This document shows positions 21,642-32,512 of a stretch of 64,000 nucleotides of DNA, piece after piece. The stretch covers positions 124,001-188,000 of the IMG/VR virus record IMGVR_UViG_3300011113_000640, one strand, 5' to 3'. The position numbers were made by a program, and so were the translations under genes. Numbering within the stretch: the first letter of the stretch is position 1; the number at the start of each line of letters is the position of its first letter. The notes below the pieces were generated by a model. It was not told the origin of the DNA, searched no databases, and saw only the letters and a list, made by a program, of their open reading frames with translations.

Positions 21642-23207
21642 TTATCGTAGTACTGCTATGAAGGGCATGGGCGGTTTTATGTCATCGCCATGGTCACGCA
21701 GTTGGTTGTTTATGGTGCTGTCATAGGTTTGTAGCAGTTGTAACATGCGCACTGCCAGCACTGTGCTCATGACAAGATCATCAGTTTCGCCGGGTTTGGC
21801 CGCATAGCCCATGCCTGAAGCCACAAAAGTTTTGAGCTCGCTGACCAGGCCCGTGCTACGGATTTTCATTCTGGCAGTTTCTACCAGCAATTTTAATTTG
21901 TTGCAGGCCGCCAGTTTGGGTTTGTTTGTGGTGTTGAATCCCTTGCGATATCTGCGCCCACTGCCCGTGCCGGGCTCACTGAGGAAATAGCCCTGTATGT
22001 TTTCTTCACCGTATTCGGCAATCGAAATCAAGGCCGCTTCGCCAATGGTGTTGTTTTCTATGCTGTAGTAGACTCGTTGAGGATCCTGCACAGTTTCGTT
22101 GATATGGGCACAGATACTGGCCAAGATACGCACCTGTTCAGGTATGGTGGTCCTGTTGTGCCGCCATTCAGCCACTTGTTCGGTGGTTTCTGCTTCAAAC
22201 ACCTGTATGGCTGCAGGATCACCTCCGGTGCCCAGGCTAGGATCCAGTGCGACCACATAGGTCCTGTCTTTTCTGGGACGCTGATACCAACGAACCTGTC
22301 CAGTTTTGTAGAGAGGTTCATGCCCTTGCAAGTCCAGGAGCTTGGCTGGAGCTATCAGAGTCTCATCATTGATAATGAATTCACACCCCATCTCTCGGCG
22401 GAAACGATCTTCACCCAGTTGCGCCCGTTGTTCAGCGGCCCAGGCTTCGTCGCGATCTGGATGTTCGTTCCAGTAACTGCGATAGGCTCTAAAGCCATTG
22501 ATGCCAAGTTCAGTGGGATTGCCGTAGGCATCCTCGCATTTGTTAGCGCCTTTCCACAACAAGGCAAACTGATCTTCATCTGAGTTGGGTGTCGACGTAA
22601 TAATGGCCTTACCACCAGTGGCCAAGGTAGGGCTGATAGATGTCCAAAACTCGCGAGCTATGGTGGGTCGCACGAACGCAAACTCGTCACAATATAACAG
22701 CGTAATACTCATACCACGACCTGTGTTTTCTGTTGTGGTGGTACTAACTATGCGACTACCATTTTCAAAATCCAAGTTGCCTTTGTTGTAACTGGTGACC
22801 CCGGCACGTATATGATCAGGGCACAGTTCGTAAGCATAACGGATACGTTGCATGATCTCCTGCGAGCCGGTGTACTTGTGTGCGGCAATCAAGATGGTTG
22901 AATCTGGACGGAACATGGCCATCCACAACAAGTAACCAGCGGCCGACGTTGACTTACCAGTTTGCCTGGGCATCATACTAATACTGTATCTGTAGTTGTG
23001 ATAGGTGTCTATCAAGCGTTTCTGATAGTCAAACGGATGATACAGCATCTTGCCCCGGGTAGGATGCTGTATGTAGAAAAAGTTGTCCATGAAATACTGC
23101 GGACCTGACACAGGATCTGCACAGGCCATGAATTCACTGAGTTGCTGGTCGGTCCAATGCTGGCGGCGATAAGGTGCTTTGACTAGGGTTGATTCAGTTT
23201 GACTCAT
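21642..23207 (-). CDS. Terminase large subunit (T4 gp17-like)
   Basis: PRQTGKS, YCDEFAF and ITSTPN; nuclease-domain motifs LDPSLGTGGD and DDLVMS. Confidence 0.95.
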   Translation of the reverse strand: MSQTESTLVKAPYRRQHWTDQQLSEFMACADPVSGPQYFMDNFFYIQHPTRGKMLYHPFDYQKRLIDTYHNYRYSISMMPRQTGKSTSAAGYLLWMAMFRPDSTILIAAHKYTGSQEIMQRIRYAYELCPDHIRAGVTSYNKGNLDFENGSRIVSTTTTENTGRGMSITLLYCDEFAFVRPTIAREFWTSISPTLATGGKAIITSTPNSDEDQFALLWKGANKCEDAYGNPTELGINGFRAYRSYWNEHPDRDEAWAAEQRAQLGEDRFRREMGCEFIINDETLIAPAKLLDLQGHEPLYKTGQVRWYQRPRKDRTYVVALDPSLGTGGDPAAIQVFEAETTEQVAEWRHNRTTIPEQVRILASICAHINETVQDPQRVYYSIENNTIGEAALISIAEYGEENIQGYFLSEPGTGSGRRYRKGFNTTNKPKLAACNKLKLLVETARMKIRSTGLVSELKTFVASGMGYAAKPGETDDLVMSTVLAVRMLQLLQTYDSTINNQLRDHGDDIKPPMPFIAVLR

Positions 23208-24331
23208 AGTAAACTACTTATTTCGGGCCATAGTTCGGCAAACTTTCCACACTGATCCGGATGATAGTGTGACTCTATCTGTTGTATGTGATCAGCCAAG
23301 GCCGGGCGCAGATCCTGTTGGCAAGGATTTCGTAGATTACCGATTACCTGTGTAAGGAATCCGCGTTCACTGGCTGATAAGTCAAGTCTGTTCAAGACCT
23401 TTGACACTTCTTTTTCTGCCGCCTGTTGTATGTCAGTGCCCAGTTTCGTAGGATCAAGATATTCGTGTTCAAAAACGTTCTGCCAGTGTATTTCTAGCTC
23501 TTGTTGTTTGACCCATTCTACAAATTCGCACAACCTGGTGGCATTGTACACATTATAAACAGCATGTATGCCCACTTGATGCCCAGGTAGTCTGGTCAAG
23601 ATTCCTAAATTTTGTTGCATCAACGACCAGTCGCCGCCGTGCCTGACATATTCATATCGTGGACCTATGTTATCAAAACTCACATTCCAGCCCACATTAT
23701 GTCGATCAGACAACAAGCGGAAAATGCGGTTTGAGGCTAGATCCACACTGAGATTTGTTATAAGGTTTACCTGTGCTGATGCAGGAACTACAGCCAAAAT
23801 TGATTCGTTTTCTTTCAGCAACAAAGGTTCGCCGCCTATCAAGGCCACTTGACTGATGCTGTCTTGATATTGACTCAGATACTCACATACCTGATGTATA
23901 TAAGGTCTGGTTCCCGAGCGAACCGGAATGCCTTTTAGGTCGGCCCATTTGGAGCTGCTTTTTTCACCGCAGTAGTTGCAACTGAGATTGCAGGTAGTGT
24001 TCCAACGCACATCTATCAGCACAGGTCTATGCTCCATGTTGTCCACTGCTGTAGCATCAAATCCTGGATTCAATTGGTTGTGCCAGTCACGTTCACTGCG
24101 TCCATAGCCGTCGGCCTGTATGCAGTTTTGACAAAACTCAGGGTGCATGCGACCTTGCCGCAGAGTTTGTCGTATTTCCTGCATGACAGGGCCGTGCAGG
24201 ATCTGTTCAATGTTGTGCTCGTTGAGATTGCCCAACATGTTGGGATCTCCTGCACAGCAGGTTTTGACATCACCTCTGGGATTGATATGCAAGCCTCGCC
24301 AAGGAGCTGCACAGTAAACTTTTGACATCAA
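23204..24331 (-). CDS. Radical SAM protein with N-terminal SPASM/twitch-like domain
   Basis: CAAPW...GDVKTCC...CQNC, then CNLSCNYC and GGEP. Confidence 0.85.
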   Translation of the reverse strand: MMSKVYCAAPWRGLHINPRGDVKTCCAGDPNMLGNLNEHNIEQILHGPVMQEIRQTLRQGRMHPEFCQNCIQADGYGRSERDWHNQLNPGFDATAVDNMEHRPVLIDVRWNTTCNLSCNYCGEKSSSKWADLKGIPVRSGTRPYIHQVCEYLSQYQDSISQVALIGGEPLLLKENESILAVVPASAQVNLITNLSVDLASNRIFRLLSDRHNVGWNVSFDNIGPRYEYVRHGGDWSLMQQNLGILTRLPGHQVGIHAVYNVYNATRLCEFVEWVKQQELEIHWQNVFEHEYLDPTKLGTDIQQAAEKEVSKVLNRLDLSASERGFLTQVIGNLRNPCQQDLRPALADHIQQIESHYHPDQCGKFAELWPEISSLL

Positions 24332-24528: not shown

Positions 24529-24969
24529 TCAATTACACCACGACTGCTTGGCGTCGCCGTAGTATTCTCTGGCAAAGCCATTGCGGATCAGTTCAGCACG
24601 TAAACTAACACCATCCAGGATCATGTCGCCCAGCACACGACCACCAAACTTGTCCCACGAGTAAAGAATCACTTGATGTTTTTTAGTTGATGCCACAGCT
24701 TTTTTGGTAAACTCCGTGGCAGCCTGACCACGGGCATCTTCCGACGGACATTGGGCGCGATGTCCTTTTTCGGGTGTGTCCACACCAAACACACGCACAG
24801 CCAGTTCAGGCTTGAGTGGTTGTGGAAGAAATGGTGCGGCAATCACAATGGTATCTCCGTCCGTGACACGCACGATCTGTGTGTCATAAGTGGCAGAATT
24901 TTTGGGTATTTTGCCTTGAGCAAATGCCAATGCAGGCACGGTCAATAATAACAATAGGAGTTTTTTCAT
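24529..24969 (-). CDS. Thermonuclease (SNase-like) with signal peptide
   Basis: MKKLLLLLL..ALAFA signal; DGDT, VRVFGVDTPE, DKFGGRVLG and GFAREY motifs. Confidence 0.9.
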   Translation of the reverse strand: MKKLLLLLLTVPALAFAQGKIPKNSATYDTQIVRVTDGDTIVIAAPFLPQPLKPELAVRVFGVDTPEKGHRAQCPSEDARGQAATEFTKKAVASTKKHQVILYSWDKFGGRVLGDMILDGVSLRAELIRNGFAREYYGDAKQSWCN

Positions 24970-24984
24970 TTAAATTTTTTCCGA

Positions 24985-26601
24985 TTAATTTGTAAGTTCT
25001 TCCCAGCCCAGTTTCCACAATAGGTCAGCGTTGTTGGCTGTGTAGGCCACTGCCAGAGTCAAGGTGCTGGGTGTTCCGGTCGCTGTTCTCCATAGTTGCA
25101 GGCGACGTTTGATGTCTTCGCTGATCTCTACTTCGTCTCGGCTGCTACTCAGTCCAGCATAGACCACAGTACCGTCAGTGATCACATTGCTGTGTATGGC
25201 GGTTTGAACAACTGATCCGGCCACGTTGCTGAAACTGGCAGTAAAGGTGGCATTTTCAATCAATTGAAATTGTCCGTATCTAACATCAATTAGCAACAGG
25301 TCCAGTTGAGCCGGTACAACTACTGCGTCAGGATAGGCTGGATTTAGTCGTATACTGCACAAGGCTGTGACAGTGTTACCTGCCGCAACTCGTGTTGGAA
25401 CTGTGCCGTTAGTCACATAACCAATCTTGGTGCTGGGGGTATAGCCGCCCTCGCTTATCACAGTGCTACAAATCTGTTTCATGGTGCTGGCACCCGAAGT
25501 AGCACCAGTGTTAGTTATTTCATATCGAGGATTTAAGGTAGCAGTGGTCATGTATACCGTGGTGTTACCCGGCTGATTGGCATGTTGGAATGTGTGGCAC
25601 ACGATGAACACACCGTTGATCACAAATCCTGTTCTAACATTGCCTACACCCAGCCACTCAACGTCACACCAAAAAATCTGTGTCAGCGTAGGATCTAAAA
25701 CTATGCCCGATGGATTGCCGGCCAACAAGGTGTTGCCGTTCCATGAGGCTTGCGGAATTCTTTCTTCAACTATGCCGCCGGTGACACTGCTGCGAATCAC
25801 TAGATTCAGGGTAGTGCCCACTGCTTCAAAGTAGATGCCGTTGTCGGCTGTGAAGTAGCCCACACGCTGGCGACAGTTGGCTTTGAGTGTGGCCATGGCA
25901 AAGGTATTCATGATCAACAAGCTCTTGCCGGGTTGATAGGTCTGAACTGTTTTGCTTTGTCTGATCACACTGGATCCACTGGTGGCAGATACATTTAGAT
26001 TGAACGAACTTTCATTGGCCACATACACCACATTGCCGCCTGTGGCTGTGATGTTTGAAAACTGATCACCGTCTATGTAACGATTTTGGCTGTCAAACAA
26101 GGTAAAGGGATTACTGACACGGAGTCGGCCAAACGCATCAAGATTGGTGCCACCTATGGTAGTTGACACATTGCCACCAGTAATATTAGCGTTAACTGTA
26201 CCGGTGATGCCCACGTTGCCTGTAATTGGTGGCAAAGCAGTGATTCCGGCTATGTTCCCAGTGATGCCTACATTGCCGGACGTTATGGCAACATTGACGT
26301 TGCCACTAACCACCCATGGACTTGTACCTTGAAGCACAGTGACGTTGCCAGTAATCACATCCACATTTACATTGCCGCCAATCGGCAGATAGGGTGTGGT
26401 TATATTTCCTAAACTACCAACAGCCGTGATATGGTTGTCGACTTCACCCGGAATGGTCACATTACCGGTGAGTGTGATGTTGGCGCCTTCGGTTAATCCT
26501 GTGCGCACAAAAACTTGGCCAGTGGTACTATTCAGCTCCAGAGCCTGGGTGATATTACGTAGATACCACGGTGCTACTTCAGTTGGTTCAGGATAGGCCA
26601 T
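24985..26601 (-). CDS. Putative virion structural protein
   Basis: G/N/V/T-rich repeats followed by DAFGRLRVS...YQPGKS...EWLGVG domain; late promoter. Confidence 0.6.
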   Translation of the reverse strand: MAYPEPTEVAPWYLRNITQALELNSTTGQVFVRTGLTEGANITLTGNVTIPGEVDNHITAVGSLGNITTPYLPIGGNVNVDVITGNVTVLQGTSPWVVSGNVNVAITSGNVGITGNIAGITALPPITGNVGITGTVNANITGGNVSTTIGGTNLDAFGRLRVSNPFTLFDSQNRYIDGDQFSNITATGGNVVYVANESSFNLNVSATSGSSVIRQSKTVQTYQPGKSLLIMNTFAMATLKANCRQRVGYFTADNGIYFEAVGTTLNLVIRSSVTGGIVEERIPQASWNGNTLLAGNPSGIVLDPTLTQIFWCDVEWLGVGNVRTGFVINGVFIVCHTFQHANQPGNTTVYMTTATLNPRYEITNTGATSGASTMKQICSTVISEGGYTPSTKIGYVTNGTVPTRVAAGNTVTALCSIRLNPAYPDAVVVPAQLDLLLIDVRYGQFQLIENATFTASFSNVAGSVVQTAIHSNVITDGTVVYAGLSSSRDEVEISEDIKRRLQLWRTATGTPSTLTLAVAYTANNADLLWKLGWEELTN

Positions 26602-26614
26602 AATATACTATTTA

Positions 26615-26914
26615 TTAGGGCTGGTAGTACACAATTTCACCTGTGGCAGGATCAAAATACAGCTGGTTGAGTCCAGCAGTGCTATTCACCACACGCACAT
26701 TGCCCAAAAAGGTGTTGGCTCCGGTAACCTGTATGATTTTTGTGAGTGCTCCAGTGGCATTGCCAATGTAGATTTCATTGGTGTTGATGTTCACGGTCAT
26801 TTCGGCAGGTCTGGCGTTGCCGTTGTAGTTTGTAACGGTTTCCTGGGCATTGTCCTTCATCACGGTACGGCTTATACCCGTGAGATCTTCATAGGGTGGT
26901 GGCGGATTGGCCAT
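26615..26914 (-). CDS. Small fibre-like structural protein
   Basis: 99 aa; the segment RPAEMTVNINTNEIYIGN resembles fibre N-terminal modules. Confidence 0.5.
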   Translation of the reverse strand: MANPPPPYEDLTGISRTVMKDNAQETVTNYNGNARPAEMTVNINTNEIYIGNATGALTKIIQVTGANTFLGNVRVVNSTAGLNQLYFDPATGEIVYYQP

Positions 26915-27306
26915 TATCTAGGATATCCTCGGAAAGGTCGGATAGGACTGACTGTGTCCACTGACTTGGGTTCTTCACTGGCAGCCGAGCTGACCAGCTT
27001 TTTGCCCCCGGGTGTCTTGGTCATTTTTAGCGCCAGGTCGATCACTGTATCCACATTGGCATCAAAACCCGATATCACACCATGTTCGCCAAAGGCTGTT
27101 TCTGCTTCCCAGGGCGGCATAAAGTGATCTACTTGATCTTGATCTTTGCCGCGGTCACTTCTGGCACGGGCCATGGCCACACCAAATCTGTAGTTTCTGT
27201 AAGGATCTGCGGCACTGAGGCCAGGCAGGACATAGGTATAACGCAGGGGTTCCGAGATCTCGGGCGGAAGCTCTCGTTGTTCACGGATGAACTCTCGGGC
27301 TCTCAT
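26914..27306 (-). CDS. MRAREF-family paralog 1 (putative head-internal protein)
   Basis: Begins MRAREFIRE; contains YRFGVAMA; ends TVSPIRPFRGY. Confidence 0.6.
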   Translation of the reverse strand: MRAREFIREQRELPPEISEPLRYTYVLPGLSAADPYRNYRFGVAMARARSDRGKDQDQVDHFMPPWEAETAFGEHGVISGFDANVDTVIDLALKMTKTPGGKKLVSSAASEEPKSVDTVSPIRPFRGYPR

Positions 27307-27701
27307 CGGCCGTATCCCCCAAATCCTGTCACAGGACTGGTCTTGTTGACCCAGTCTGCTTCGGTGCTACGATTGTCTGTGAGCTTCTTGACTTCTCCAG
27401 CTCCCACTGATTTGGCAGCTGCGTTGATGATTTTTAAGTCGGCATCACTGTAAGTGGCCAAGAGTGGATCTCCAGCAAAAGCACCTGCTGGAGGTGTGGG
27501 ATAATCAGGTGCACCGGCCATGGCTATACCAAAACGCCATTGGGTGTAAGGACTGCCACCTTGTTTGTTTGAGCTGATGTCAGGCATGCTGATGGCGCCT
27601 TTGATGGCCGAGTGTTGACTCTTGGCCAGTTTCCGTCCGTTGGCTGGAACGTCAGCAGCACTGCCAAATTTTGCCTCAGCTACAAATTCTCTTGCTCTCA
27701 T
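27303..27701 (-). CDS. MRAREF-family paralog 2
   Basis: Start reassigned to 27701 (ATGA overlap): MRAREFVAE; WRFGIAMA; ends KTSPVTGFGGY. Confidence 0.6.
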   Translation of the reverse strand: MRAREFVAEAKFGSAADVPANGRKLAKSQHSAIKGAISMPDISSNKQGGSPYTQWRFGIAMAGAPDYPTPPAGAFAGDPLLATYSDADLKIINAAAKSVGAGEVKKLTDNRSTEADWVNKTSPVTGFGGYGR

Positions 27702-28576
27702 TCCATGTCCTGTAAATGCATGTGACCAAACGGTGGATTGCTCTTGACGTTTTGCCATAATTCTCTGTTGCTCATTATCTCCACCCAGACATCTGTGGTG
27801 GGACGATTCAAACTCCAAAAATCAAACTTCATGTGACTGCTCACAGGGCGGCAATACAATGTGCGTTCTTTGGGCACACACAGTTGTTGGCTTGTGGTGC
27901 GCATTTTCTTACCGTCGGTGCTGGTCCTAAGTATATTTAGTTGCGGATCATTGATGTAGACTTGGCACATGCCATCCACTAGATCCTGTGGTGTGCTGGC
28001 TGACTTTACCACGGCTTCTGCCAACAACAAGCGGCTTTCACTGCTGATACGGTCCAGGGTTTTACGTTTATCTCTTGGACTGCGTTGCATACCGGCTGTG
28101 GGCATCCAAATGCCGTGATTGGTCCTGGCCACTGTTTGATCTTGGGGTATCTTTTTGGCTTTAAATCTGTAAGGACGTTTTCCGTCCCAGTTGCTGGCTT
28201 CAATCAAGAACATGTTGTCCTGATCAAATACCATGGTGCAACCACACAGGCGTTGTTGGACTAAAAATTTTGCCGCTGCCTCGGCCGTAGGCAAGGTCAA
28301 GGCTTCGGCAATCATCTGGCCATCAGGGCTGGTTTTGACCCGGCCAGATTCAACTTCGGTTTCATCATTGCCCACATCCAGGCTGGTGTTCAAGATACTT
28401 ACACCTCGGCTGTTGATGCCTTCTTTGTAGCCAGTGATTTCGTCATGCATCATCATGCGATCGGCGCTTTCGGATTCGCTTTCGATGAAGTCTAATACAG
28501 GTATGTAGGTTCGGTCTCGATTTTTGGCACCGGCCCATCCAATACCGTCAAAGTATTTGGCTACGATCACGCACAT
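27698..28576 (-). CDS. Ntn-hydrolase (Cys nucleophile; NRDE/C45-like)
   Basis: Cys at position 2; KNRDR, EGINSRG and RTNHG motifs. Confidence 0.7.
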   Translation of the reverse strand: MCVIVAKYFDGIGWAGAKNRDRTYIPVLDFIESESESADRMMMHDEITGYKEGINSRGVSILNTSLDVGNDETEVESGRVKTSPDGQMIAEALTLPTAEAAAKFLVQQRLCGCTMVFDQDNMFLIEASNWDGKRPYRFKAKKIPQDQTVARTNHGIWMPTAGMQRSPRDKRKTLDRISSESRLLLAEAVVKSASTPQDLVDGMCQVYINDPQLNILRTSTDGKKMRTTSQQLCVPKERTLYCRPVSSHMKFDFWSLNRPTTDVWVEIMSNRELWQNVKSNPPFGHMHLQDME

Positions 28577-28577
28577 T

Positions 28578-28958
28578 TTATTTTGCGTAGCCCCGGAAAC
28601 CTTTTACTGGGCTTGTAGTATTCACATATTCAGCCTCAAGACTGCCGGGCAACACATGATCTCGTGGATTCATGCCCAGTTTTTTCATGATGGCTTTGAG
28701 TTTTTTCCTATCATATTCAGTGTAGGCACTGAACACCGGAAGGTTTCCAAAGAATCCAATGTCATCAACCTTGCCTATTTGGTCTGGGTCCATGCCGGCC
28801 AGGCTCGACACACGATAGAAATCATAATAGCGGCCCCAATACACATCGCCATTTCCACCCGGACCAATTATGCCAGGATGTGCCTGATCAAATTCGTGAT
28901 TGGCAGTGGATCTGGTTCCGCCCCTACTAGCTTCGGTGACGAATTCTCGGGCACGCAC
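28578..28958 (-). CDS. MRAREF-family paralog 3
   Basis: GTG start, MRAREFVTE; ends TTSPVKGFRGY. Confidence 0.6.
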   Translation of the reverse strand: MRAREFVTEASRGGTRSTANHEFDQAHPGIIGPGGNGDVYWGRYYDFYRVSSLAGMDPDQIGKVDDIGFFGNLPVFSAYTEYDRKKLKAIMKKLGMNPRDHVLPGSLEAEYVNTTSPVKGFRGYAK

Positions 28959-28960
28959 TG

Positions 28961-29254
28961 TTATTGTCCTGCGGTGTTGAACACACTATATTGTGCAGAA
29001 CTTTGTGTGCCTAATTCCAATGCTGTAAATGGTGAGCCTACTATTGTAACTTTGTTTCCGGCACCTGAATAACCTTCAAACACTGTGTTGGCTGGAATCG
29101 TGATTGGTGCAGTGTAGATATTGCCAATGGCTGCGGCGGTTCCCAAGGCTGTGGCATAGGCTTGATAAGTCACTGCGTTGGCAGCCGTGGAGATCTGTAG
29201 TTTGTCTGTGTAAACAGTTGTGTTAGCTAGTGTGGTGTATACGTTTGCGGCCAT
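28961..29254 (-). CDS. Small Ala/Thr-rich structural protein
   Basis: 97 aa with SD AGGA; composition typical of virion proteins. Confidence 0.55.
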   Translation of the reverse strand: MAANVYTTLANTTVYTDKLQISTAANAVTYQAYATALGTAAAIGNIYTAPITIPANTVFEGYSGAGNKVTIVGSPFTALELGTQSSAQYSVFNTAGQ

Positions 29255-29269
29255 TTTATTTTCCTTTGT

Positions 29270-30007
29270 TTACCATGCACGACACGACCAATATCGCGCC
29301 TTGGTCTTTGGTCCCGGGTTGTCACAGTTGTGTCTTGCTCTAAAACTCTTTCTACGAGCCGGATTGGATTTTTTGATCTTCATGGTCTTTTGACCCAATC
29401 TCTTGGCAGTATTTCCTCCATGACCAAAGTTCACTTTCTTTACATTGCCGGTCTTGGGATCTTTCACATACACTTTTGATTTTTTCACATCGCCAGCCAT
29501 GGGTTTGTTGAGAGTGACTTCACGGCCTTGATACTTGGCTTCATCAGTGGCCAAGCGTTGTGCGGCATCAATAGCGGCTTCTTTGCCTGCTACCACAGCA
29601 GCATCTTGATCGTCTTTCAACTGCTCTGTCTCGCCAGTGGCTGTACGCCAAAAGTCTTCGATCCAGTCTTCATCACCATAGCGATCTTTGAACTCTTCCA
29701 GGCTCATGCGTAGTGCAGCCGTATACATTTCTTTTTTCATGGCGCCTTCGCCTACCAAGGTGCCATAGCCCATGGTCTCCATGACTATGTTGCTGTCACC
29801 CTCGTCGGTGTCTTCCAAGGTAGCCCATTCAGCCAGGGCTGCATTGATCTCGGGCGTACTATCTAACAGTATGCAATCGTCTGCTACTTCAATGATGTAA
29901 GTTTCACAAACAACTTCATCAGGAAGTTCAAAGGCAAAGATGTCACCTGCTGCAGGTGTGTTCATCCACTGTTCACTTTCCGCGAGATAGTCTTTTAGCG
30001 ATTTCAT
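29270..30007 (-). CDS. Putative head-internal protein with basic C-terminal domain
   Basis: MKSLKDYLAE N-terminus; acidic middle; C-terminal RRKSFRARHNC...KARYWSCRAW. Confidence 0.6.
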   Translation of the reverse strand: MKSLKDYLAESEQWMNTPAAGDIFAFELPDEVVCETYIIEVADDCILLDSTPEINAALAEWATLEDTDEGDSNIVMETMGYGTLVGEGAMKKEMYTAALRMSLEEFKDRYGDEDWIEDFWRTATGETEQLKDDQDAAVVAGKEAAIDAAQRLATDEAKYQGREVTLNKPMAGDVKKSKVYVKDPKTGNVKKVNFGHGGNTAKRLGQKTMKIKKSNPARRKSFRARHNCDNPGPKTKARYWSCRAW

Positions 30008-31899
30008 TGTGCTTTGTAGTTTTGATATAAACGGAACAGGTTGCGCTCAAGTTCCACTGACTCTTCCATTGAAACTTGGCGACGTAATTGGCTTGCAATC
30101 ACAGGAACTGTTGTTTGTCCAGTTGATTTGGGACCATTGAGGCCGCCTGAATACTGCATGGCATTGTCGCTGGTTTCTGTGTTTGTGGGCCAGTCTGGGC
30201 TGTTCTCATCTAATTCTTCACAGCCACAGGGTGCTTTGCCACAGGTGCCACAACTTTCTGCGTTGTCGTGACTGCCCATGCCAGCCATCTTTAACAATGC
30301 GGCCAAGGCTTCGGCATCTTCGCCGTCGGCACTGACAGTGATGTTCTTGGATGGATTACCATCAGGACCAGTGTTCATGTTCACACTTACATTCATGCCT
30401 TCTGTGAGTGCCTGCCGGAACTTTTGGTCCAGGCTTTCATACACACCTTTGCCAAACTGCATGCCACCTTTGGATTTACCACCAGTGGGTGCTGTGGCCA
30501 CTGATCCGGCTACAGTTGTTTCTTCGACTTCGTCTTTCTTCTTGCCTTTGGCTTGTTTTGCTGCTTGTTTCATGGGTTCAGTCTTGTTGCCATCTTTGTC
30601 AAGATCCAGGAAGTCAGGTTTGCCGGCTTCTTTGACTTTCTTTGGCAAACCTTTTTCTTTGGTTGCGGCAAACTTGCGTAGTTCACCCTTGGGCATCCGG
30701 GCCATTTCTTTCGAAGCACCACGCAACTCGCTTTTGGGAATCTCGCCCTTTTGTGCGGCATGTGCTATGCCAGCGGCTCTGCGTTGTGCTTGACTGACGG
30801 CTTTCTCTGCCACAGGTTCCGCATCATTTTTTTGTTGATGCATGTATTGATTGCTGCTGTTGATGTAGTCCAAGGCCTTGGTAATCTTGCTTTGTACCCA
30901 CTCTGGCAGATTTTCGTCGTCACCAAGAATGCTGTGCAGTTCTTTGGCGGCCATGGCCAAACTTTCTAAATCGTCCTTGGCCATTTCGCCTTCGCGGTCG
31001 TATTCACCTTTGTTGATCAAGCTCACACTTTCAATGTCTTCCGAACTCATGTTTGATGGGCGGGTCATCATGACACCATCGGTGTCGAGGTCTTCTTCAG
31101 TCTTCTCTTTTCTAGTGCCTTTGTGCTTCCAGGCACCCTTGGTAGTGCGCTCAGGACCCTTGGCAGGACCTTTTGGACGACCTTTCTTCTTGGGTTGATC
31201 ACTAACTTCTGCGTCGTCTTTTTCTTCAGGTTCTTCTTTTCTTGTGTAACGCTTGCTGTAGCCTGTGTCTTTGACATCATATCTTGGATGCTCGTCTTTG
31301 GTGGCAAACATTGATTTGGCCACTTCAGGATCAAATGCTGTGCCAGCACTGCGAGATTTTTTGGTTTCTTTTTTCTCTTCGATGTTGCTGGTGTCTTTGT
31401 ATTTTTTGCCATCCAGTTCAAACTCGCCACCCCGGGGTGTGCTCTTGAGCTTGGCTGTGAATGCGTTGCCTTCGTCGGCCATTTCTTCGTCCATCTTATC
31501 ATGCTTGGCACGTATTTTGGCCATGGTCTCTTTGCTGGCACCTTCACGACCGGCCTTCTGCAGGGCCTTCATGCCAGTCTCGCCGTATTTTTTCTTGCCC
31601 AGGTATGCTTGCAATGCACTCTCATCCATGTCGCCAGCACTTTCCTTGGCACGCAGTTTGGCCAACACAGCGCCGGCCACTTTCTCACCGCGCTCTTTGC
31701 TGCCATAACGCTCACCTGCACTCTTGGCAATCTTGGAGAACATCTTGCCAGGCTTGCCAATGTCTTTGCCCGCACGAGCCTTCTTGGCTGAATAGTCTCT
31801 AGTGCTGGCTTCGGCCACAGCTGATTGAGCGCTCTCATTGAGGTCTTGTTTCTTGGCCAAGTCAGCCAACTTCTTGTTTAGGTCGTAAAAAAATGTCAT
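30004..31899 (-). CDS. Modular Lys/Glu-rich putative head-internal polyprotein (contains DUF3008-like and DxDxDG modules)
   Basis: Basic modules separated by hydrophobic-x-E sites; KAVSQAQRRAAG...KGLPKKV resembles DUF3008; also DLDKDGN. Confidence 0.55.
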   Translation of the reverse strand: MTFFYDLNKKLADLAKKQDLNESAQSAVAEASTRDYSAKKARAGKDIGKPGKMFSKIAKSAGERYGSKERGEKVAGAVLAKLRAKESAGDMDESALQAYLGKKKYGETGMKALQKAGREGASKETMAKIRAKHDKMDEEMADEGNAFTAKLKSTPRGGEFELDGKKYKDTSNIEEKKETKKSRSAGTAFDPEVAKSMFATKDEHPRYDVKDTGYSKRYTRKEEPEEKDDAEVSDQPKKKGRPKGPAKGPERTTKGAWKHKGTRKEKTEEDLDTDGVMMTRPSNMSSEDIESVSLINKGEYDREGEMAKDDLESLAMAAKELHSILGDDENLPEWVQSKITKALDYINSSNQYMHQQKNDAEPVAEKAVSQAQRRAAGIAHAAQKGEIPKSELRGASKEMARMPKGELRKFAATKEKGLPKKVKEAGKPDFLDLDKDGNKTEPMKQAAKQAKGKKKDEVEETTVAGSVATAPTGGKSKGGMQFGKGVYESLDQKFRQALTEGMNVSVNMNTGPDGNPSKNITVSADGEDAEALAALLKMAGMGSHDNAESCGTCGKAPCGCEELDENSPDWPTNTETSDNAMQYSGGLNGPKSTGQTTVPVIASQLRRQVSMEESVELERNLFRLYQNYKAQ

Positions 31900-31903
31900 G
31901 CTG

Positions 31904-32512
31904 TTATCCTCTTGGGTTGGCGCCGGTGGCTGGGCGTGGTGGTCGCTTGACCTTGGTCATAGGGCTTGAAGTGCCCATGGGTAAATCATTTGTGGTCTTG
32001 GCTGGTGGTGTCTTGCCTCCAGCTACAGTGAAATCACTGCGATAAGCATTATTCAATACTCCATGCTCACCGTAGGGTGCTGAATAATCTTTGCTGAGTG
32101 CTTTCTGCTCTGCGTCAGGAGCAGGATAGTCTGTGTCTGTGAGCAAGTCTTTGTTTTGATCCGCGATCTTTTCACGCTCGACGTCCATGCTGTCTTCGTG
32201 TGGTGTGGTCAACATGATGATTCTATTGGGATCCAAGAACAACAACTGTGCGATCTGTTTGATCTGTGGTTCAATGGCTGGATAGCGGAATTCACAATCC
32301 ATACTGGTCACTGAGTCATTGCTGTGCTTGGGGAAGTCAGCGGGCTTGAGTTGCACTGGCGTGGTTTTTGGCGAACCAATTTTCACAGGATCAAACTGTT
32401 TGAGTTTTTCAGTCAGCATCTTGACAAAGTCAGGAGCAACGTCACCCACGATTTTGATCCTATAGCGGTAGGTTCTTTCGCTTTCGGCCAGGTATTCTTG
32501 AAATTTTTTCAT
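31904..32512 (-). CDS. Putative head-internal protein
   Basis: N-terminus MKKFQEYLAE resembles the T4 capsid targeting sequence; TAAATA at 32531-32536. Confidence 0.6.
   Translation of the reverse strand: MKKFQEYLAESERTYRYRIKIVGDVAPDFVKMLTEKLKQFDPVKIGSPKTTPVQLKPADFPKHSNDSVTSMDCEFRYPAIEPQIKQIAQLLFLDPNRIIMLTTPHEDSMDVEREKIADQNKDLLTDTDYPAPDAEQKALSKDYSAPYGEHGVLNNAYRSDFTVAGGKTPPAKTTNDLPMGTSSPMTKVKRPPRPATGANPRG

What the first reader, a model, noticed from the sequence alone, without database searches (positions are those of the whole stretch)
26914..28958. Three MRAREF paralogs wrapped around an Ntn-hydrolase
Seen: three ~130-aa paralogs share the MRAREF start, a central (Y/W)R(F/V)xxx(M/L)A helix and a C-terminal V.T.SP...F.GY-like tail. 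They are tightly packed around a Cys-Ntn hydrolase that lacks the targeting-like N-terminus. Inference: a small undescribed module, either an amidase/peptidase or acyltransferase with three dedicated substrates or partners, or a tandemly diversified effector family.
Basis: partly seen in the sequence, partly recalled or inferred. Interest (0 to 1): 0.6.

Follow-up and report, generated by a model that had tools for sequence, protein, structure and literature searches.

The report
Leader-tagged head proteins around accessory amidase
Three small paralogous genes of a freshwater jumbo phage carry a T4-style "pack me into the capsid" leader peptide, and they form a variable gene array into which a Cys-Ntn amidase gene was inserted as an optional extra rather than as their dedicated enzyme.

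Summary
Three paralogs of 126, 132 and 130 aa (26-32% identity) flank a 292-aa protein in a translationally coupled minus-strand operon. The 292-aa protein is a genuine Cys-Ntn hydrolase: its fold matches NAAA, IAT and acid ceramidase at Z about 21, with Cys2 on their catalytic Cys.

The window lies in a 320.5-kb T4-superfamily jumbo phage from freshwater. The phage encodes a T4-type portal, a gp21-type prohead protease and a gp23-type capsid protein.

The shared start M-R-A-x-E-F-(I/V/L)-x-E resembles T4's capsid targeting sequence (MKTYQEFIAE) and ends in the gp21 cleavage motif. It is conserved at peptide level in 150 relatives. It also heads unrelated proteins, including two neighbouring genes here.

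My best reading is that these are leader-targeted, protease-trimmed internal head proteins.

The "enzyme with three dedicated substrates" idea is not supported:
- The paralog array (1-4 copies) is present in all 31 relatives whose whole slot could be read; 10 of them lack the hydrolase.
- On a terminase tree the hydrolase needs about 9 gains or losses.
- 64 of 78 paralog-seeded loci have no hydrolase nearby.
- Distant hydrolase homologs have no paralogs beside them.

In some distant phages the hydrolase carries its own leader ending (L/V/I)-x-E just before the Cys.

No wet-lab evidence exists for any of this.

The parts
28578..28958 (-). MRAREF-family paralog 1 (P0001, 126 aa, GTG start, MRAREFVTE|A)
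   Evidence: family HMM E 1.5e-43
27698..28576 (-). Cys-Ntn hydrolase, divergent peptidase C45-like (P0002, 292 aa). It starts M-C, so Cys2 becomes the N-terminal nucleophile after Met removal. It has no leader.
27303..27701 (-). MRAREF-family paralog 2 (P0003, 132 aa, MRAREFVAE|A). This is the most conserved ortholog group of the family.
26914..27306 (-). MRAREF-family paralog 3 (P0004, 130 aa, MRAREFIRE|Q). This type is variable or often replaced in relatives.
28932..28958 (-). Nine-codon leader of P0001 (putative capsid targeting sequence plus protease site V-x-E)
27675..27701 (-). Nine-codon leader of P0003
27280..27306 (-). Nine-codon leader of P0004
28581..28634 (-). 18-residue basic C-terminal tail of P0001, following the invariant S-x-E (..VNTTSPVKGFRGYAK). 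It is specific to this family.
27306..27359 (-). 18-residue C-terminal tail of P0003 (..VNKTSPVTGFGGYGR)
26917..26970 (-). 18-residue C-terminal tail of P0004 (..VDTVSPIRPFRGYPR)
28961..29254 (-). Conserved 97-aa gene that immediately precedes the array in relatives. It marks the upstream edge of the slot.
29270..30007 (-). Unrelated 245-aa protein with a T4-CTS-like leader MKSLKDYLAE|S. The leader is kept in 20 orthologs.
31904..32512 (-). Unrelated 202-aa protein with the leader MKKFQEYLAE|S (T4 IPII/IPIII: MKTYQEFIAE|A). The leader is kept in 28 orthologs. The PA5oct homolog is an MS-verified virion protein.
26615..26914 (-). 99-aa gene translationally coupled (TAATG) to the end of the array, with a weak Mtd_N-like hit
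21642..23207 (-). T4-type large terminase. It marks the downstream edge of the variable slot in relatives.

Best explanation
The three MRAREF genes belong to a large, unannotated family of ~125-aa proteins of freshwater T4-superfamily jumbo phages. I read them as internal head proteins.

Inferred mechanism:
1. The nine-residue leader M-R-A-x-E-F-(I/V/L)-x-E acts like T4's capsid targeting sequence. It docks the newly made protein onto the scaffolding core while the prohead is built.
2. The phage's gp21-type prohead protease then cuts after the invariant Glu9, at an (I/V/L)-x-E site.
3. The mature protein stays inside the head with the DNA. It is probably expelled into the host at infection.

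The family has its own extra signature that T4 internal proteins lack: a central P-Y-x-x-Y-R motif, an invariant S-x-E, and a basic 18-residue tail S-P-V-x-x-F-K-G-Y-x-R. This is most likely a docking or structural element.

The array is a fixed but copy-number-variable feature of the virion gene block, lying between the 97-aa gene and the terminase. It behaves like the hyperplastic internal-protein loci of T-even phages, because other genes with the same leader have been inserted into it.

The Cys-Ntn hydrolase is one such insert. It is an accessory C45-like amidohydrolase or acyltransferase that is gained and lost among close relatives. In this clade its nucleophile Cys is exposed by removal of Met1. 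In other phages the same enzyme carries a CTS-like leader ending (L/V/I)-x-E directly before the Cys. There the prohead protease would both release the enzyme and create its active N-terminus. It is not a dedicated processing enzyme for the three paralogs.

Shown here: the anatomy, family distributions, fold, leader similarity and the presence of the protease.
Inferred only: targeting, cleavage, packaging, ejection and the enzyme's substrate.
For: Leader similarity:
- T4 IPII/IPIII start MKTYQEFIAE|A (read from AF158101).
- The window has MKKFQEYLAE|S, MKSLKDYLAE|S and three copies of MRAREF(V/I)xE|.
- T4 gp21 cuts after L/I-x-E, and the first 10 residues suffice for targeting (PMC9026906).

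Head machinery in the same genome:
- Peptidase_S77 (gp21) at E 3e-26, T4 portal at E 5e-102 and gp23 capsid protein at E 6e-97.
- L-x-E motifs occur in the N-terminal regions of the capsid protein, protease and scaffold-like genes.

Conservation in the 56-sequence alignment:
- The invariant residues are R2, A3, E5, F6, E9, E114 and S122.
- Mean conservation is 0.87 in residues 1-9 against 0.25 in residues 10-50.
- All synonymous codons are used at the invariant leader residues in 150 genes, so selection acts on the peptide.

Portability of the leader:
- It also heads unrelated proteins: the 202-aa and 245-aa families, ~96-aa RWNC-ended proteins, and ORFs of 166, 186, 237, 290 and 323 aa.
- The C-terminal tail is restricted to this family.
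- The PA5oct homolog of the 202-aa leader-bearing gene is a virion protein by ESI-MS/MS.

Array versus hydrolase:
- The array is present in 31 of 31 fully covered slots, and the hydrolase in 21. The hydrolase needs 9 changes on the TerL tree.
- Gene order varies.
- 64 of 78 family-seeded loci lack the hydrolase.

Hydrolase:
- Fold matches at Z 19-21 with Cys2 on the catalytic Cys.
- NF040521 (C45) hit at E 2e-6.
- 17 of 56 relatives hit Pfam AAT.
- About a dozen relatives have leaders ending (L/V/I)xE|C. One is MKTVSEFTSKANNPFLNE|C, which resembles T4 IPI (MKTFKEFTSTTTPVSTITE|A).
- Chryseobacterium phage MA9V-1, which has such a hydrolase, also has a gp21-family protease domain.
Against: - There is no proteomic, N-terminal sequencing or expression evidence for any of these proteins. 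No cultured relative carries the family: tblastn against 50,697 phage records found nothing.
- The leader is one residue shorter than T4's and starts MRA rather than MK.
- The mature cores are mostly acidic to neutral (median pI 5.7). My recollection is that the T4 internal proteins are basic; this comparison was not tested here.
- The P0003 type is as conserved as the terminase. That looks more like a structural or core role than an arms-race effector.
- At least one copy is present in every slot read, which also suits an essential assembly role.
- The hydrolase here has no leader, so whether it enters the head at all is unknown.
- The AF2 model of the family is only moderately confident (pLDDT 67).
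- The locus samples are the best 80 of larger hit lists and come from fragmentary contigs, so the proportions are not population frequencies.
Confidence: 0.6

Rival explanations
1. Functional enzyme-partner module. The Ntn hydrolase acts on or binds the three paralogs. For example, it could trim or acylate the conserved C-terminal tail. Alternatively, the leaderless enzyme could ride into the capsid bound to the leader-bearing paralogs.
For: - In 80 hydrolase-seeded loci (49-86% identity) the enzyme almost always lies inside or at the end of the paralog array.
- The genes are translationally coupled here.
- The enzyme lacks a leader in this clade, while relatives elsewhere have one. Piggy-back loading would explain its position.
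- The tail is a conserved, exposed peptide.
Against: - The two occur independently in both directions.
- The hydrolase is gained and lost among near-identical TerL lineages. L148 lacks it while L016 and L068 have it; L122 lacks it while L077 has it.
- No single paralog type is consistently adjacent to it.
- All hydrolase-seeded loci belong to one phage clade, so the co-location may simply be inherited synteny in an insertion hot spot.
- The solved enzymes that match the fold most closely (NAAA, acid ceramidase, bile salt hydrolase, penicillin V acylase, IAT) act, from general knowledge, on small-molecule acyl amides rather than protein tails.
Confidence: 0.1
2. The paralogs are late, non-virion proteins, or virion proteins outside the head. 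On this reading the conserved N-terminus serves another purpose, such as an oligomerisation helix, a chaperone or assembly tag, or a translation-coupling element. It would not be a capsid targeting and cleavage signal.
For: - The array lies next to tail, neck and fibre-like genes rather than next to the portal-protease-capsid block, which is about 40 kb away.
- AF2 predicts the leader as a short helix.
- There is no direct evidence of cleavage.
Against: - The match to the experimentally defined T4 CTS covers the positions reported to matter for targeting (4, 7) and for processing (8, 10).
- Glu9 is invariant and is preceded by I, V or L at P3 in all 56 sequences.
- The leader is portable across unrelated families.
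- Synonymous codon variation rules out an element acting at DNA or RNA level.
- A T4-type protease is present.
- T4's own internal-protein genes also lie far from its head genes, at about 65-74 kb beside lysozyme and the tRNA genes.
Confidence: 0.2
3. The proteins are head-internal but not effectors. On this reading the family is a set of prohead core or 'inner body'-like structural proteins. They would be comparable to T4 gp67/gp68 or the phiKZ/SPN3US paralog families, needed for building or filling a very large capsid, and partly degraded or retained rather than acting in the host. This is a sub-variant of the best explanation and differs only in the fate and role of the mature protein.
For: - At least one copy is present in all 31 slots.
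- The P0003 type is 62-91% identical across relatives, similar to TerL.
- The conserved central motif and tail suggest a fixed binding partner.
- Giant phages are known to carry copy-number-variable paralog families of processed head proteins (PMC5694885).
Against: - Other copies, such as the P0004 type and extra members, are strongly divergent or replaced between close relatives. This is typical of conflict genes.
- There is no similarity to PF12699 or any known core protein.
Confidence: 0.3

Closest known systems
T4 internal proteins IPI, IPII, IPIII and their capsid targeting sequence (CTS)
   Same: - A short N-terminal leader with the same core (E-F/Y-I/L/V-x-E), ending in the prohead-protease motif.
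- The leader is shared by otherwise unrelated small proteins.
- The genes sit in variable loci.
- The phage has gp20/gp21/gp23-type head genes.
   Different: - The cargo family has no sequence similarity to any T4 IP.
- The leader is 9 residues and starts MRA.
- The cargo has a conserved central motif and a basic C-terminal tail that T4 IPs lack.
- The mature parts are mostly not basic.
- The host phage is a 320-kb freshwater jumbo phage only distantly related to T4 (TerL closest to PA5oct at 53%).
- Nothing has been tested experimentally.
T4 Alt (ADP-ribosyltransferase), an enzyme packaged through a leader and processed at both ends
   Same: It is an enzyme delivered through the capsid, with gp21 processing. 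It is the precedent for a catalytic cargo, and for C-terminal processing as well (PMC9026906).
   Different: - The enzyme here is an Ntn amidohydrolase and lacks a leader in this phage.
- The C-terminal S-x-E of the paralogs is followed by Pro in at least 20 of the 56 sequences. That makes cleavage there doubtful.
Paralog families of processed head or ejection proteins in giant phages (phiKZ inner-body proteins, SPN3US families A and B)
   Same: Tandem paralogs whose number varies between related giant phages, located in the head and processed after Glu by a gp21-related protease (PMC5694885).
   Different: - Those propeptides are over 100 residues with an S/A/G-x-E motif, whereas here the leader is a T4-length 9-10 residues with I/V/L-x-E.
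- There is no sequence relationship (no PF12699 hit).
Peptidase C45 / acyl-CoA:isopenicillin N acyltransferase, with the related NAAA, acid ceramidase, BSH/PVA and TANGO2 Ntn hydrolases
   Same: - The alpha-beta-beta-alpha fold, at Z 16-21.
- An N-terminal Cys on the catalytic position.
- A K/R-N-x-D motif about 16 residues downstream.
- Remote profile hits to C45/AAT.
   Different: - It scores below the curated thresholds of both Pfam and NCBIfam.
- It has no internal autoproteolytic propeptide, since it starts M-C.
- It is phage-encoded in a virion gene block.
- Its substrate is unknown.

Membership tests
T4-type CTS-led internal head proteins | N-terminal leader of about 10-20 residues resembling the T4 CTS (MKTYQEFIAE) | tested here: met
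   T4 IPII/IPIII N-termini were read from AF158101. They were compared with MRAREF(V/I)xE, MKKFQEYLAE and MKSLKDYLAE. The aromatic, aliphatic and Glu positions reported to matter (4, 7, 8, 10) are matched.
T4-type CTS-led internal head proteins | The leader ends in a gp21 cleavage motif (L/I-x-E, cut after Glu) | tested here: met
   Glu9 is invariant and P3 is I, V or L in 56 of 56 sequences. This is a sequence criterion only; cleavage itself is not shown.
T4-type CTS-led internal head proteins | The phage encodes a gp21-family prohead protease and T4-type head genes | tested here: met
   PF03420 at E 3e-26, PF07230 at E 5e-102 and PF07068 at E 6e-97, located at genome positions 189-195 kb just outside the window.
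T4-type CTS-led internal head proteins | The same leader is carried by unrelated cargo proteins (a portable signal) | tested here: met
   28 orthologs of the 202-aa gene, 20 of the 245-aa gene, and several other non-family ORFs carry it. The C-terminal tail is family-specific.
T4-type CTS-led internal head proteins | The protein is found in the mature head with the leader removed, and is ejected into the host | not testable with these tools
   There is no cultured member and no RNA or proteome data. The only indirect support is that the PA5oct homolog of the neighbouring 202-aa gene is an MS-verified virion protein.
Ntn hydrolase, peptidase C45 / AAT-like | Four-layer alpha-beta-beta-alpha Ntn fold | tested here: met
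   AF2 pLDDT 90. Foldseek E 6e-9 to IAT. VIA Z 21.1 to 3gvz, 20.8 to NAAA and 19.5 to IAT over 200-221 residues.
Ntn hydrolase, peptidase C45 / AAT-like | The catalytic nucleophile (Cys) is the first residue of the mature chain | tested here: met
   Model residue 2 aligns with the first residue of the mature chains in the PDB rows, by chain numbering: IAT 103, NAAA 126 and acid ceramidase 143. Cys2 is at least 90% conserved, with a few Ser variants. Met1 removal is inferred from the known specificity of Met aminopeptidase.
Ntn hydrolase, peptidase C45 / AAT-like | Scores above the curated family thresholds (Pfam PF03417; NCBIfam NF040521, 85 bits) | tested here: not met
   P0002 has no Pfam hit at E<=1 and scores 27.3 bits against NF040521 (E 2e-6). 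17 of 56 relatives hit PF03417 at E<=0.1, the best at 1.8e-7. It is therefore a divergent sister group rather than a curated member.
Ntn hydrolase, peptidase C45 / AAT-like | Made as a proenzyme that cuts itself in front of the Cys | tested here: not met
   The protein starts M-C, with a stop codon close upstream. Relatives use three routes: an M-C start (67 representatives), a short (L/V/I)xE|C leader (about 12), and ..A|C in giant proteins (about 20-30).
Dedicated enzyme-substrate or enzyme-partner gene module | The components co-occur across relatives and are not found apart | tested here: not met
   they occur independently in both directions, and the hydrolase is repeatedly gained and lost.
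phiKZ-type inner-body paralog family (PF12699) | Sequence membership | tested here: not met
   No Pfam hit for any of the 56 family members.

The most novel reading that the evidence does not exclude
The slot is a cargo-loading locus for the capsid, and the Ntn hydrolase is itself an injected enzyme. On this reading the hydrolase family is a zymogen unmasked by the capsid maturation protease. Cleavage after (L/V/I)-x-E removes the targeting leader and in the same step creates the catalytic N-terminal Cys, so the enzyme becomes active only inside the head. In the clade of this window the enzyme has lost its leader. It would then be carried in by binding the leader-bearing MRAREF proteins, perhaps through their conserved basic C-terminal tail. 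As far as I know and could find, neither a protease-activated Ntn hydrolase nor piggy-back capsid loading has been described.
Probability: 0.12. Interest if true: 0.75.

Novelty: new variant of a known kind. Interest (0 to 1): 0.5.

Why it matters
If the reading is right, the T4 capsid-targeting mechanism is much older and more widespread than the T-even phages. It would operate in an abundant, uncultured clade of 320-360-kb freshwater phages, on at least half a dozen different cargo families.

That gives a simple sequence rule, M-(R/K)-x-x-(x)-(E/D)-(F/Y)-(I/L/V)-x-E at the start of a gene. The rule could be used to list the proteins these phages inject.

It also defines a new, very common protein family with no entry in Pfam, PHROGs, NCBIfam or the PDB.

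It points to a divergent Ntn amidohydrolase family of large phages. This family is found free, with CTS-like leaders, and at the N-terminus of giant multi-enzyme proteins. Its substrate is unknown.

Finally, it corrects a tempting misreading: tight packing of genes here reflects a shared insertion hot spot, not an enzyme-substrate pair.

Tried and rejected
- **Complex prediction.** Complex prediction of the hydrolase (alignment A2) with P0003 (alignment A4) scored 0.00 in both runs, and the controls were not run. The tool's verdict is 'no answer'. It is not used as evidence either way.
- **Fold of the paralog family.** The model has pLDDT 66.6 and no PDB match at E<=0.001. The ESM Atlas gave only unnamed viral clusters below 0.9.
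- **Family searches for the paralogs.** Pfam, PHROGs, NCBIfam, a PDB profile search and tblastn against phage records gave nothing significant.
- **Profile of the hydrolase family against PDB sequences.** No hit. Only the fold search and NCBIfam/Pfam scans of relatives connected it to C45.
- **The search for related loci with the 56-sequence hydrolase alignment.** It failed because no stretch was conserved enough. I repeated it with 13 closer sequences.
- **A second protease site at the invariant S-x-E, about 18 residues from the C-terminus.** This would release the tail, as in T4 Alt. I left it as doubtful because the residue after Glu is Pro in at least 20 of the 56 sequences. P3 is Ser there, which is the phiKZ-type motif rather than the T4-type motif.
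- **The conserved start as a DNA-level recombination or translation element.** Rejected: every synonymous codon is used at the invariant residues.
- **Literature.** Searches for an Ntn hydrolase in jumbo phages or polyvalent proteins found nothing.
- **Reads.** Read laying was not used. No RNA run holds the stretch.
- **Genetic code and sequence handling.** No alternative genetic code was needed.
Full report
**What is there.**
The window is positions 124001-188000 of a single 320,541-bp virus record (46% G+C; CheckV completeness 93%). Between 26914 and 28958 the minus strand carries four genes:
- P0001: 28578-28958, 126 aa, GTG start.
- P0002: 27698-28576, 292 aa.
- P0003: 27303-27701, 132 aa.
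- P0004: 26914-27306, 130 aa.

The junctions are TAA-A-ATG, ATGA and ATGA. A conserved 97-aa gene ends 2 nt before P0001, and a 99-aa gene overlaps the end of P0004 (TAATG). This is one translationally coupled run.

The three small proteins are 26-32% identical, with 21 invariant columns. They share the start MRAREF(V/I)xE, a central Y-x-x-(Y/W)-R-(F/V) helix and the tail S-P-(V/I)-x-x-F-x-G-Y-x-(R/K).

**What the phage is.**
Around the locus lie:
- a T4-type large terminase (21642-23207);
- a radical-SAM/SPASM gene and a secreted SNase-like nuclease;
- a virion structural protein of the T4-like cyanophage type (24985-26601);
- a DUF3008 protein;
- head-closure, tail-tube and tail-sheath genes.

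UvsX and gp32 homologs are nearby. Just beyond the window, at genome positions 189-195 kb, is a T4-order head block. It holds the portal (PF07230, E 5e-102), a 288-aa protein, the prohead protease (PF03420, E 3e-26), a 365-aa scaffold-like protein and the major capsid protein (PF07068, E 6e-97).

The terminase is closest to Pseudomonas phage PA5oct (53%), Sinorhizobium phage Phosso, Agrobacterium phage Atu_ph07 and Cronobacter phage GAP32. The stretch is held by freshwater and lake metagenomes from ten studies, and no RNA run holds it. Both gene families have hundreds of near relatives on metagenomic contigs of up to 348 kb.

**The hydrolase.**
P0002 has no Pfam or PHROG hit. A search of 1.84 billion representatives gave 378 relatives.
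- In a 56-sequence alignment K18 is invariant. Cys2, N19, R20, D21, E52, N55, N153, H154 and R182 are at least 90% conserved.
- AlphaFold2 on that alignment gave pLDDT 90 and pTM 0.90.
- Foldseek matched isopenicillin N acyltransferase (E 6e-9), CV2077, bile salt hydrolases, NAAA, TANGO2, penicillin V acylase and C69 dipeptidase.
- VIA-align gave Z 21.1 (3gvz), 20.8 (NAAA), 19.5 (IAT) and 19.3 (acid ceramidase) over 200-221 residues. Model residue 2 aligned to the first residue of the mature chains, which is their catalytic Cys.
- NCBIfam's C45 model hits at E 2e-6 but only 27 bits against a cut-off of 85.
- 17 of 56 relatives hit Pfam AAT, the best at 1.8e-7.

It is therefore a real Cys-Ntn hydrolase: a divergent sister of peptidase C45, and not a curated member.

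The way the Cys is exposed differs across the family.
- 67 representatives start M-C, as here. In these, Met aminopeptidase would expose the Cys; this is an inference from its known specificity.
- Four start M-S or V-S.
- About a dozen have a short leader ending (L/V/I)-x-E directly before the Cys.
- About 20-30 have ..A|C, at or inside proteins of 1000-2800 aa.

One leader, MKTVSEFTSKANNPFLNE|C, is very like T4 IPI's MKTFKEFTSTTTPVSTITE|A. The homolog in Chryseobacterium phage MA9V-1 reads ..NNNEFLNE|C. It sits among genes starting MNFNKNE|A, MSNYINE|A and MKGFFINE|A. That phage has a gp21-family protease domain.

**The leader.**
T4 IPII and IPIII begin MKTYQEFIAE|A. According to the review PMC9026906:
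- these ten residues suffice to load foreign proteins into the T4 head;
- residues 4 and 7 matter for targeting, and 8 and 10 for processing;
- gp21 cuts after L/I-x-E.

In this window the 202-aa gene starts MKKFQEYLAE|S, the 245-aa gene starts MKSLKDYLAE|S, and the three paralogs start MRAREF(V/I)xE|. These are the only good matches to such a pattern in the whole genome, and all five lie within 6 kb.

In 56 diverse family members R2, A3, E5, F6 and E9 are invariant and position 7 is always I, V or L. The residue after E9 varies freely. Mean column conservation is 0.87 for residues 1-9 and 0.25 for residues 10-50.

In 150 distinct genes every synonymous codon is used at the invariant positions: six Arg codons at R2, four Ala codons at A3, and both codons at E5, F6 and E9. 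So the peptide is under selection, not the DNA.

The leader is portable. It is kept in 28 orthologs of the 202-aa gene and 20 of the 245-aa gene. It also heads proteins that the family HMM does not recognise:
- ~96-aa proteins ending ..RWNC;
- ORFs of 166, 186, 237-242 and 290 aa;
- a 323-aa ORF starting MKAHEIIVE that sits inside the array in four contigs.

The C-terminal tail occurs only in the paralog family. The PA5oct homolog of the 202-aa gene (MKSFRDYYD..) is annotated as a structural protein found by ESI-MS/MS. The N-terminal regions of this phage's capsid protein, protease and scaffold-like protein contain L-x-E motifs.

**Enzyme and paralogs: linked or not?**
I fetched 80 IMG/VR loci seeded with the hydrolase (49-86% identity) and 80 seeded with the paralog family (78 of them new).
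- *Hydrolase-seeded set.* The enzyme is nearly always in or beside an array of 2-5 paralogs. The order varies: M-H-M-M (as here), M-M-H-M, H-M-M, M-M-M-H and M-M-M-M-H.
- *Paralog-seeded set.* 64 of the 78 new loci have no hydrolase within 6 kb. Of 16 loci that include both edges of the slot (the DUF3008, 245-aa or 97-aa gene upstream and the terminase downstream), 10 have one to three paralogs directly after the 97-aa gene and no hydrolase.
- *Both sets pooled.* 31 loci with distinct terminases cover the whole slot. All 31 have the array (1-4 copies) and 21 have the hydrolase. On a terminase tree the hydrolase needs 9 changes, at least 3 of them forced by well-supported branches. That is no fewer than shuffled labels need (mean 8.7). 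There are near-identical terminases with and without it (L016 and L068 versus L148; L077 versus L122).
- *Further out.* Hydrolase homologs at 33-46% identity sit beside flagellin-like, RNA-ligase or 2OG-oxygenase genes. No paralog is detectable there even at E 10.

The hydrolase is an accessory insert in a variable array.

Caveats:
- The loci are the best 80 of 411 and 186 confirmed hits, and many are contig fragments.
- The tree is a quick search.
- Recombination could also decouple the terminase from the slot.

**The paralog family itself.**
Besides the leader, the near-invariant positions are Y52 and R56 (the centre of a predicted helix), S112, E114, S122, P123 and G129. The distance from E114 to the C-terminus is 18 residues in 45 of 56 sequences. 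The tail is basic (median pI 9.8). The part between E9 and E114 is mostly acidic to neutral (median pI 5.7).

The S-x-E could be a second protease site, but Pro follows it in at least 20 of the 56 sequences. I therefore treat the tail as a docking or structural element.

The orthologous groups evolve at different rates. The P0003 type is 62-91% identical across relatives, comparable to the terminase. The P0004 type and extra copies are often 35-55% identical or replaced.

The AF2 model is modest (pLDDT 67). It shows a leader helix, a small alpha/beta core and an extended tail, and has no PDB match. The family has no entry in Pfam, PHROGs, NCBIfam or the PDB, and no member in 50,697 phage records.

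**Conclusion.**
The best-supported reading (confidence about 0.6) is that the three genes encode internal head proteins. They would be loaded through a T4-type capsid targeting leader and trimmed by the gp21-type protease. They form a copy-number-variable array that also serves as an insertion site for other leader-bearing cargo. Whether the mature proteins are injected effectors or core/'inner body' components cannot be decided from sequence, and the evidence is mixed.

The Ntn hydrolase is real and interesting in its own right, but it is an optional passenger and not the centre of a module. It remains possible that it is packaged too, either by piggy-backing here or by a leader whose removal creates the catalytic Cys in other phages. 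That is the most novel reading the data leave open (probability about 0.12).

All mechanistic steps (targeting, cleavage, packaging, ejection, substrate) are inferences. No experiment or expression data bear on them.

Noticed in passing
proteins P0326, P0332, P0346, P0254 (relatives of window 27698-28576): The same Ntn-hydrolase domain sits at the extreme N-terminus of giant proteins of 1000-2400 aa. It is followed by topoisomerase IB, GNAT acetyltransferase, ChaC/AIG2 gamma-glutamyl cyclotransferase-like, poly(A)-polymerase-head and 2H-phosphoesterase domains. This looks like the injected 'polyvalent protein' architecture. The polyvalent-protein paper does not mention an Ntn domain.
   Followed up: partly
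L111:3019-6420, L113:1360-2634, L114:4996-6399, L115:5272-6453: In some contigs a paralog-family domain is fused in frame behind a larger ORF. The junction reads ..YANKVIRE|MRAQEF.., which places an (I)-x-E site exactly in front of the internal Met. This may be a polyprotein cut by the prohead protease.
   Followed up: no
L002:3324-7097 (Chryseobacterium phage MA9V-1): The hydrolase homolog there (..EFLNE|C) lies among genes whose products start MSNYINE|A, MNFNKNE|A and MKGFFINE|A. This suggests a different leader dialect (x-I/K-N-E|A) for the same mechanism in a cultured 213-kb phage.
   Followed up: partly
window 29270-30007 and L019:8876-9166, L029:9271-9564, L118:3305-3589: The C-terminal domain of the 245-aa protein (..RRKSFRARHNC..YWSCRAW, phrog_7595) also occurs in Pelagibacter phages. 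In relatives it occurs as ~96-aa proteins headed by the MRAxEF leader. It is a Cys-rich, basic, widespread small domain of unknown function.
   Followed up: no
window 23204-24331: A radical-SAM/SPASM enzyme gene sits immediately upstream of the terminase, inside the structural block. It overlaps the terminase start by 4 nt and is present in only some relatives.
   Followed up: no
window 24529-24969: A staphylococcal-nuclease-like protein with an apparent signal peptide (MKKLLLLLLTVPALAFAQ..) lies in the same variable slot. Relatives carry other signal-peptide proteins at this place.
   Followed up: no
window 30004-31899: A 631-aa, very Lys/Glu-rich protein with one DUF3008 domain. The region has a strong AT skew (-0.37). 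Orthologs range from 219 to 1202 aa, so its length is highly variable.
   Followed up: no
L171:4501-5103 (PA5oct gp202): The MS-verified structural homolog of the 202-aa gene starts MKSFRDYYD, with Asp where the window's protein has its cleavage Glu. In T4, Asp at that position is reported to allow targeting but block processing.
   Followed up: no
Only 186 encode a detectable relative of P0003. The leader may therefore head many more cargo families than were examined.
   Followed up: no
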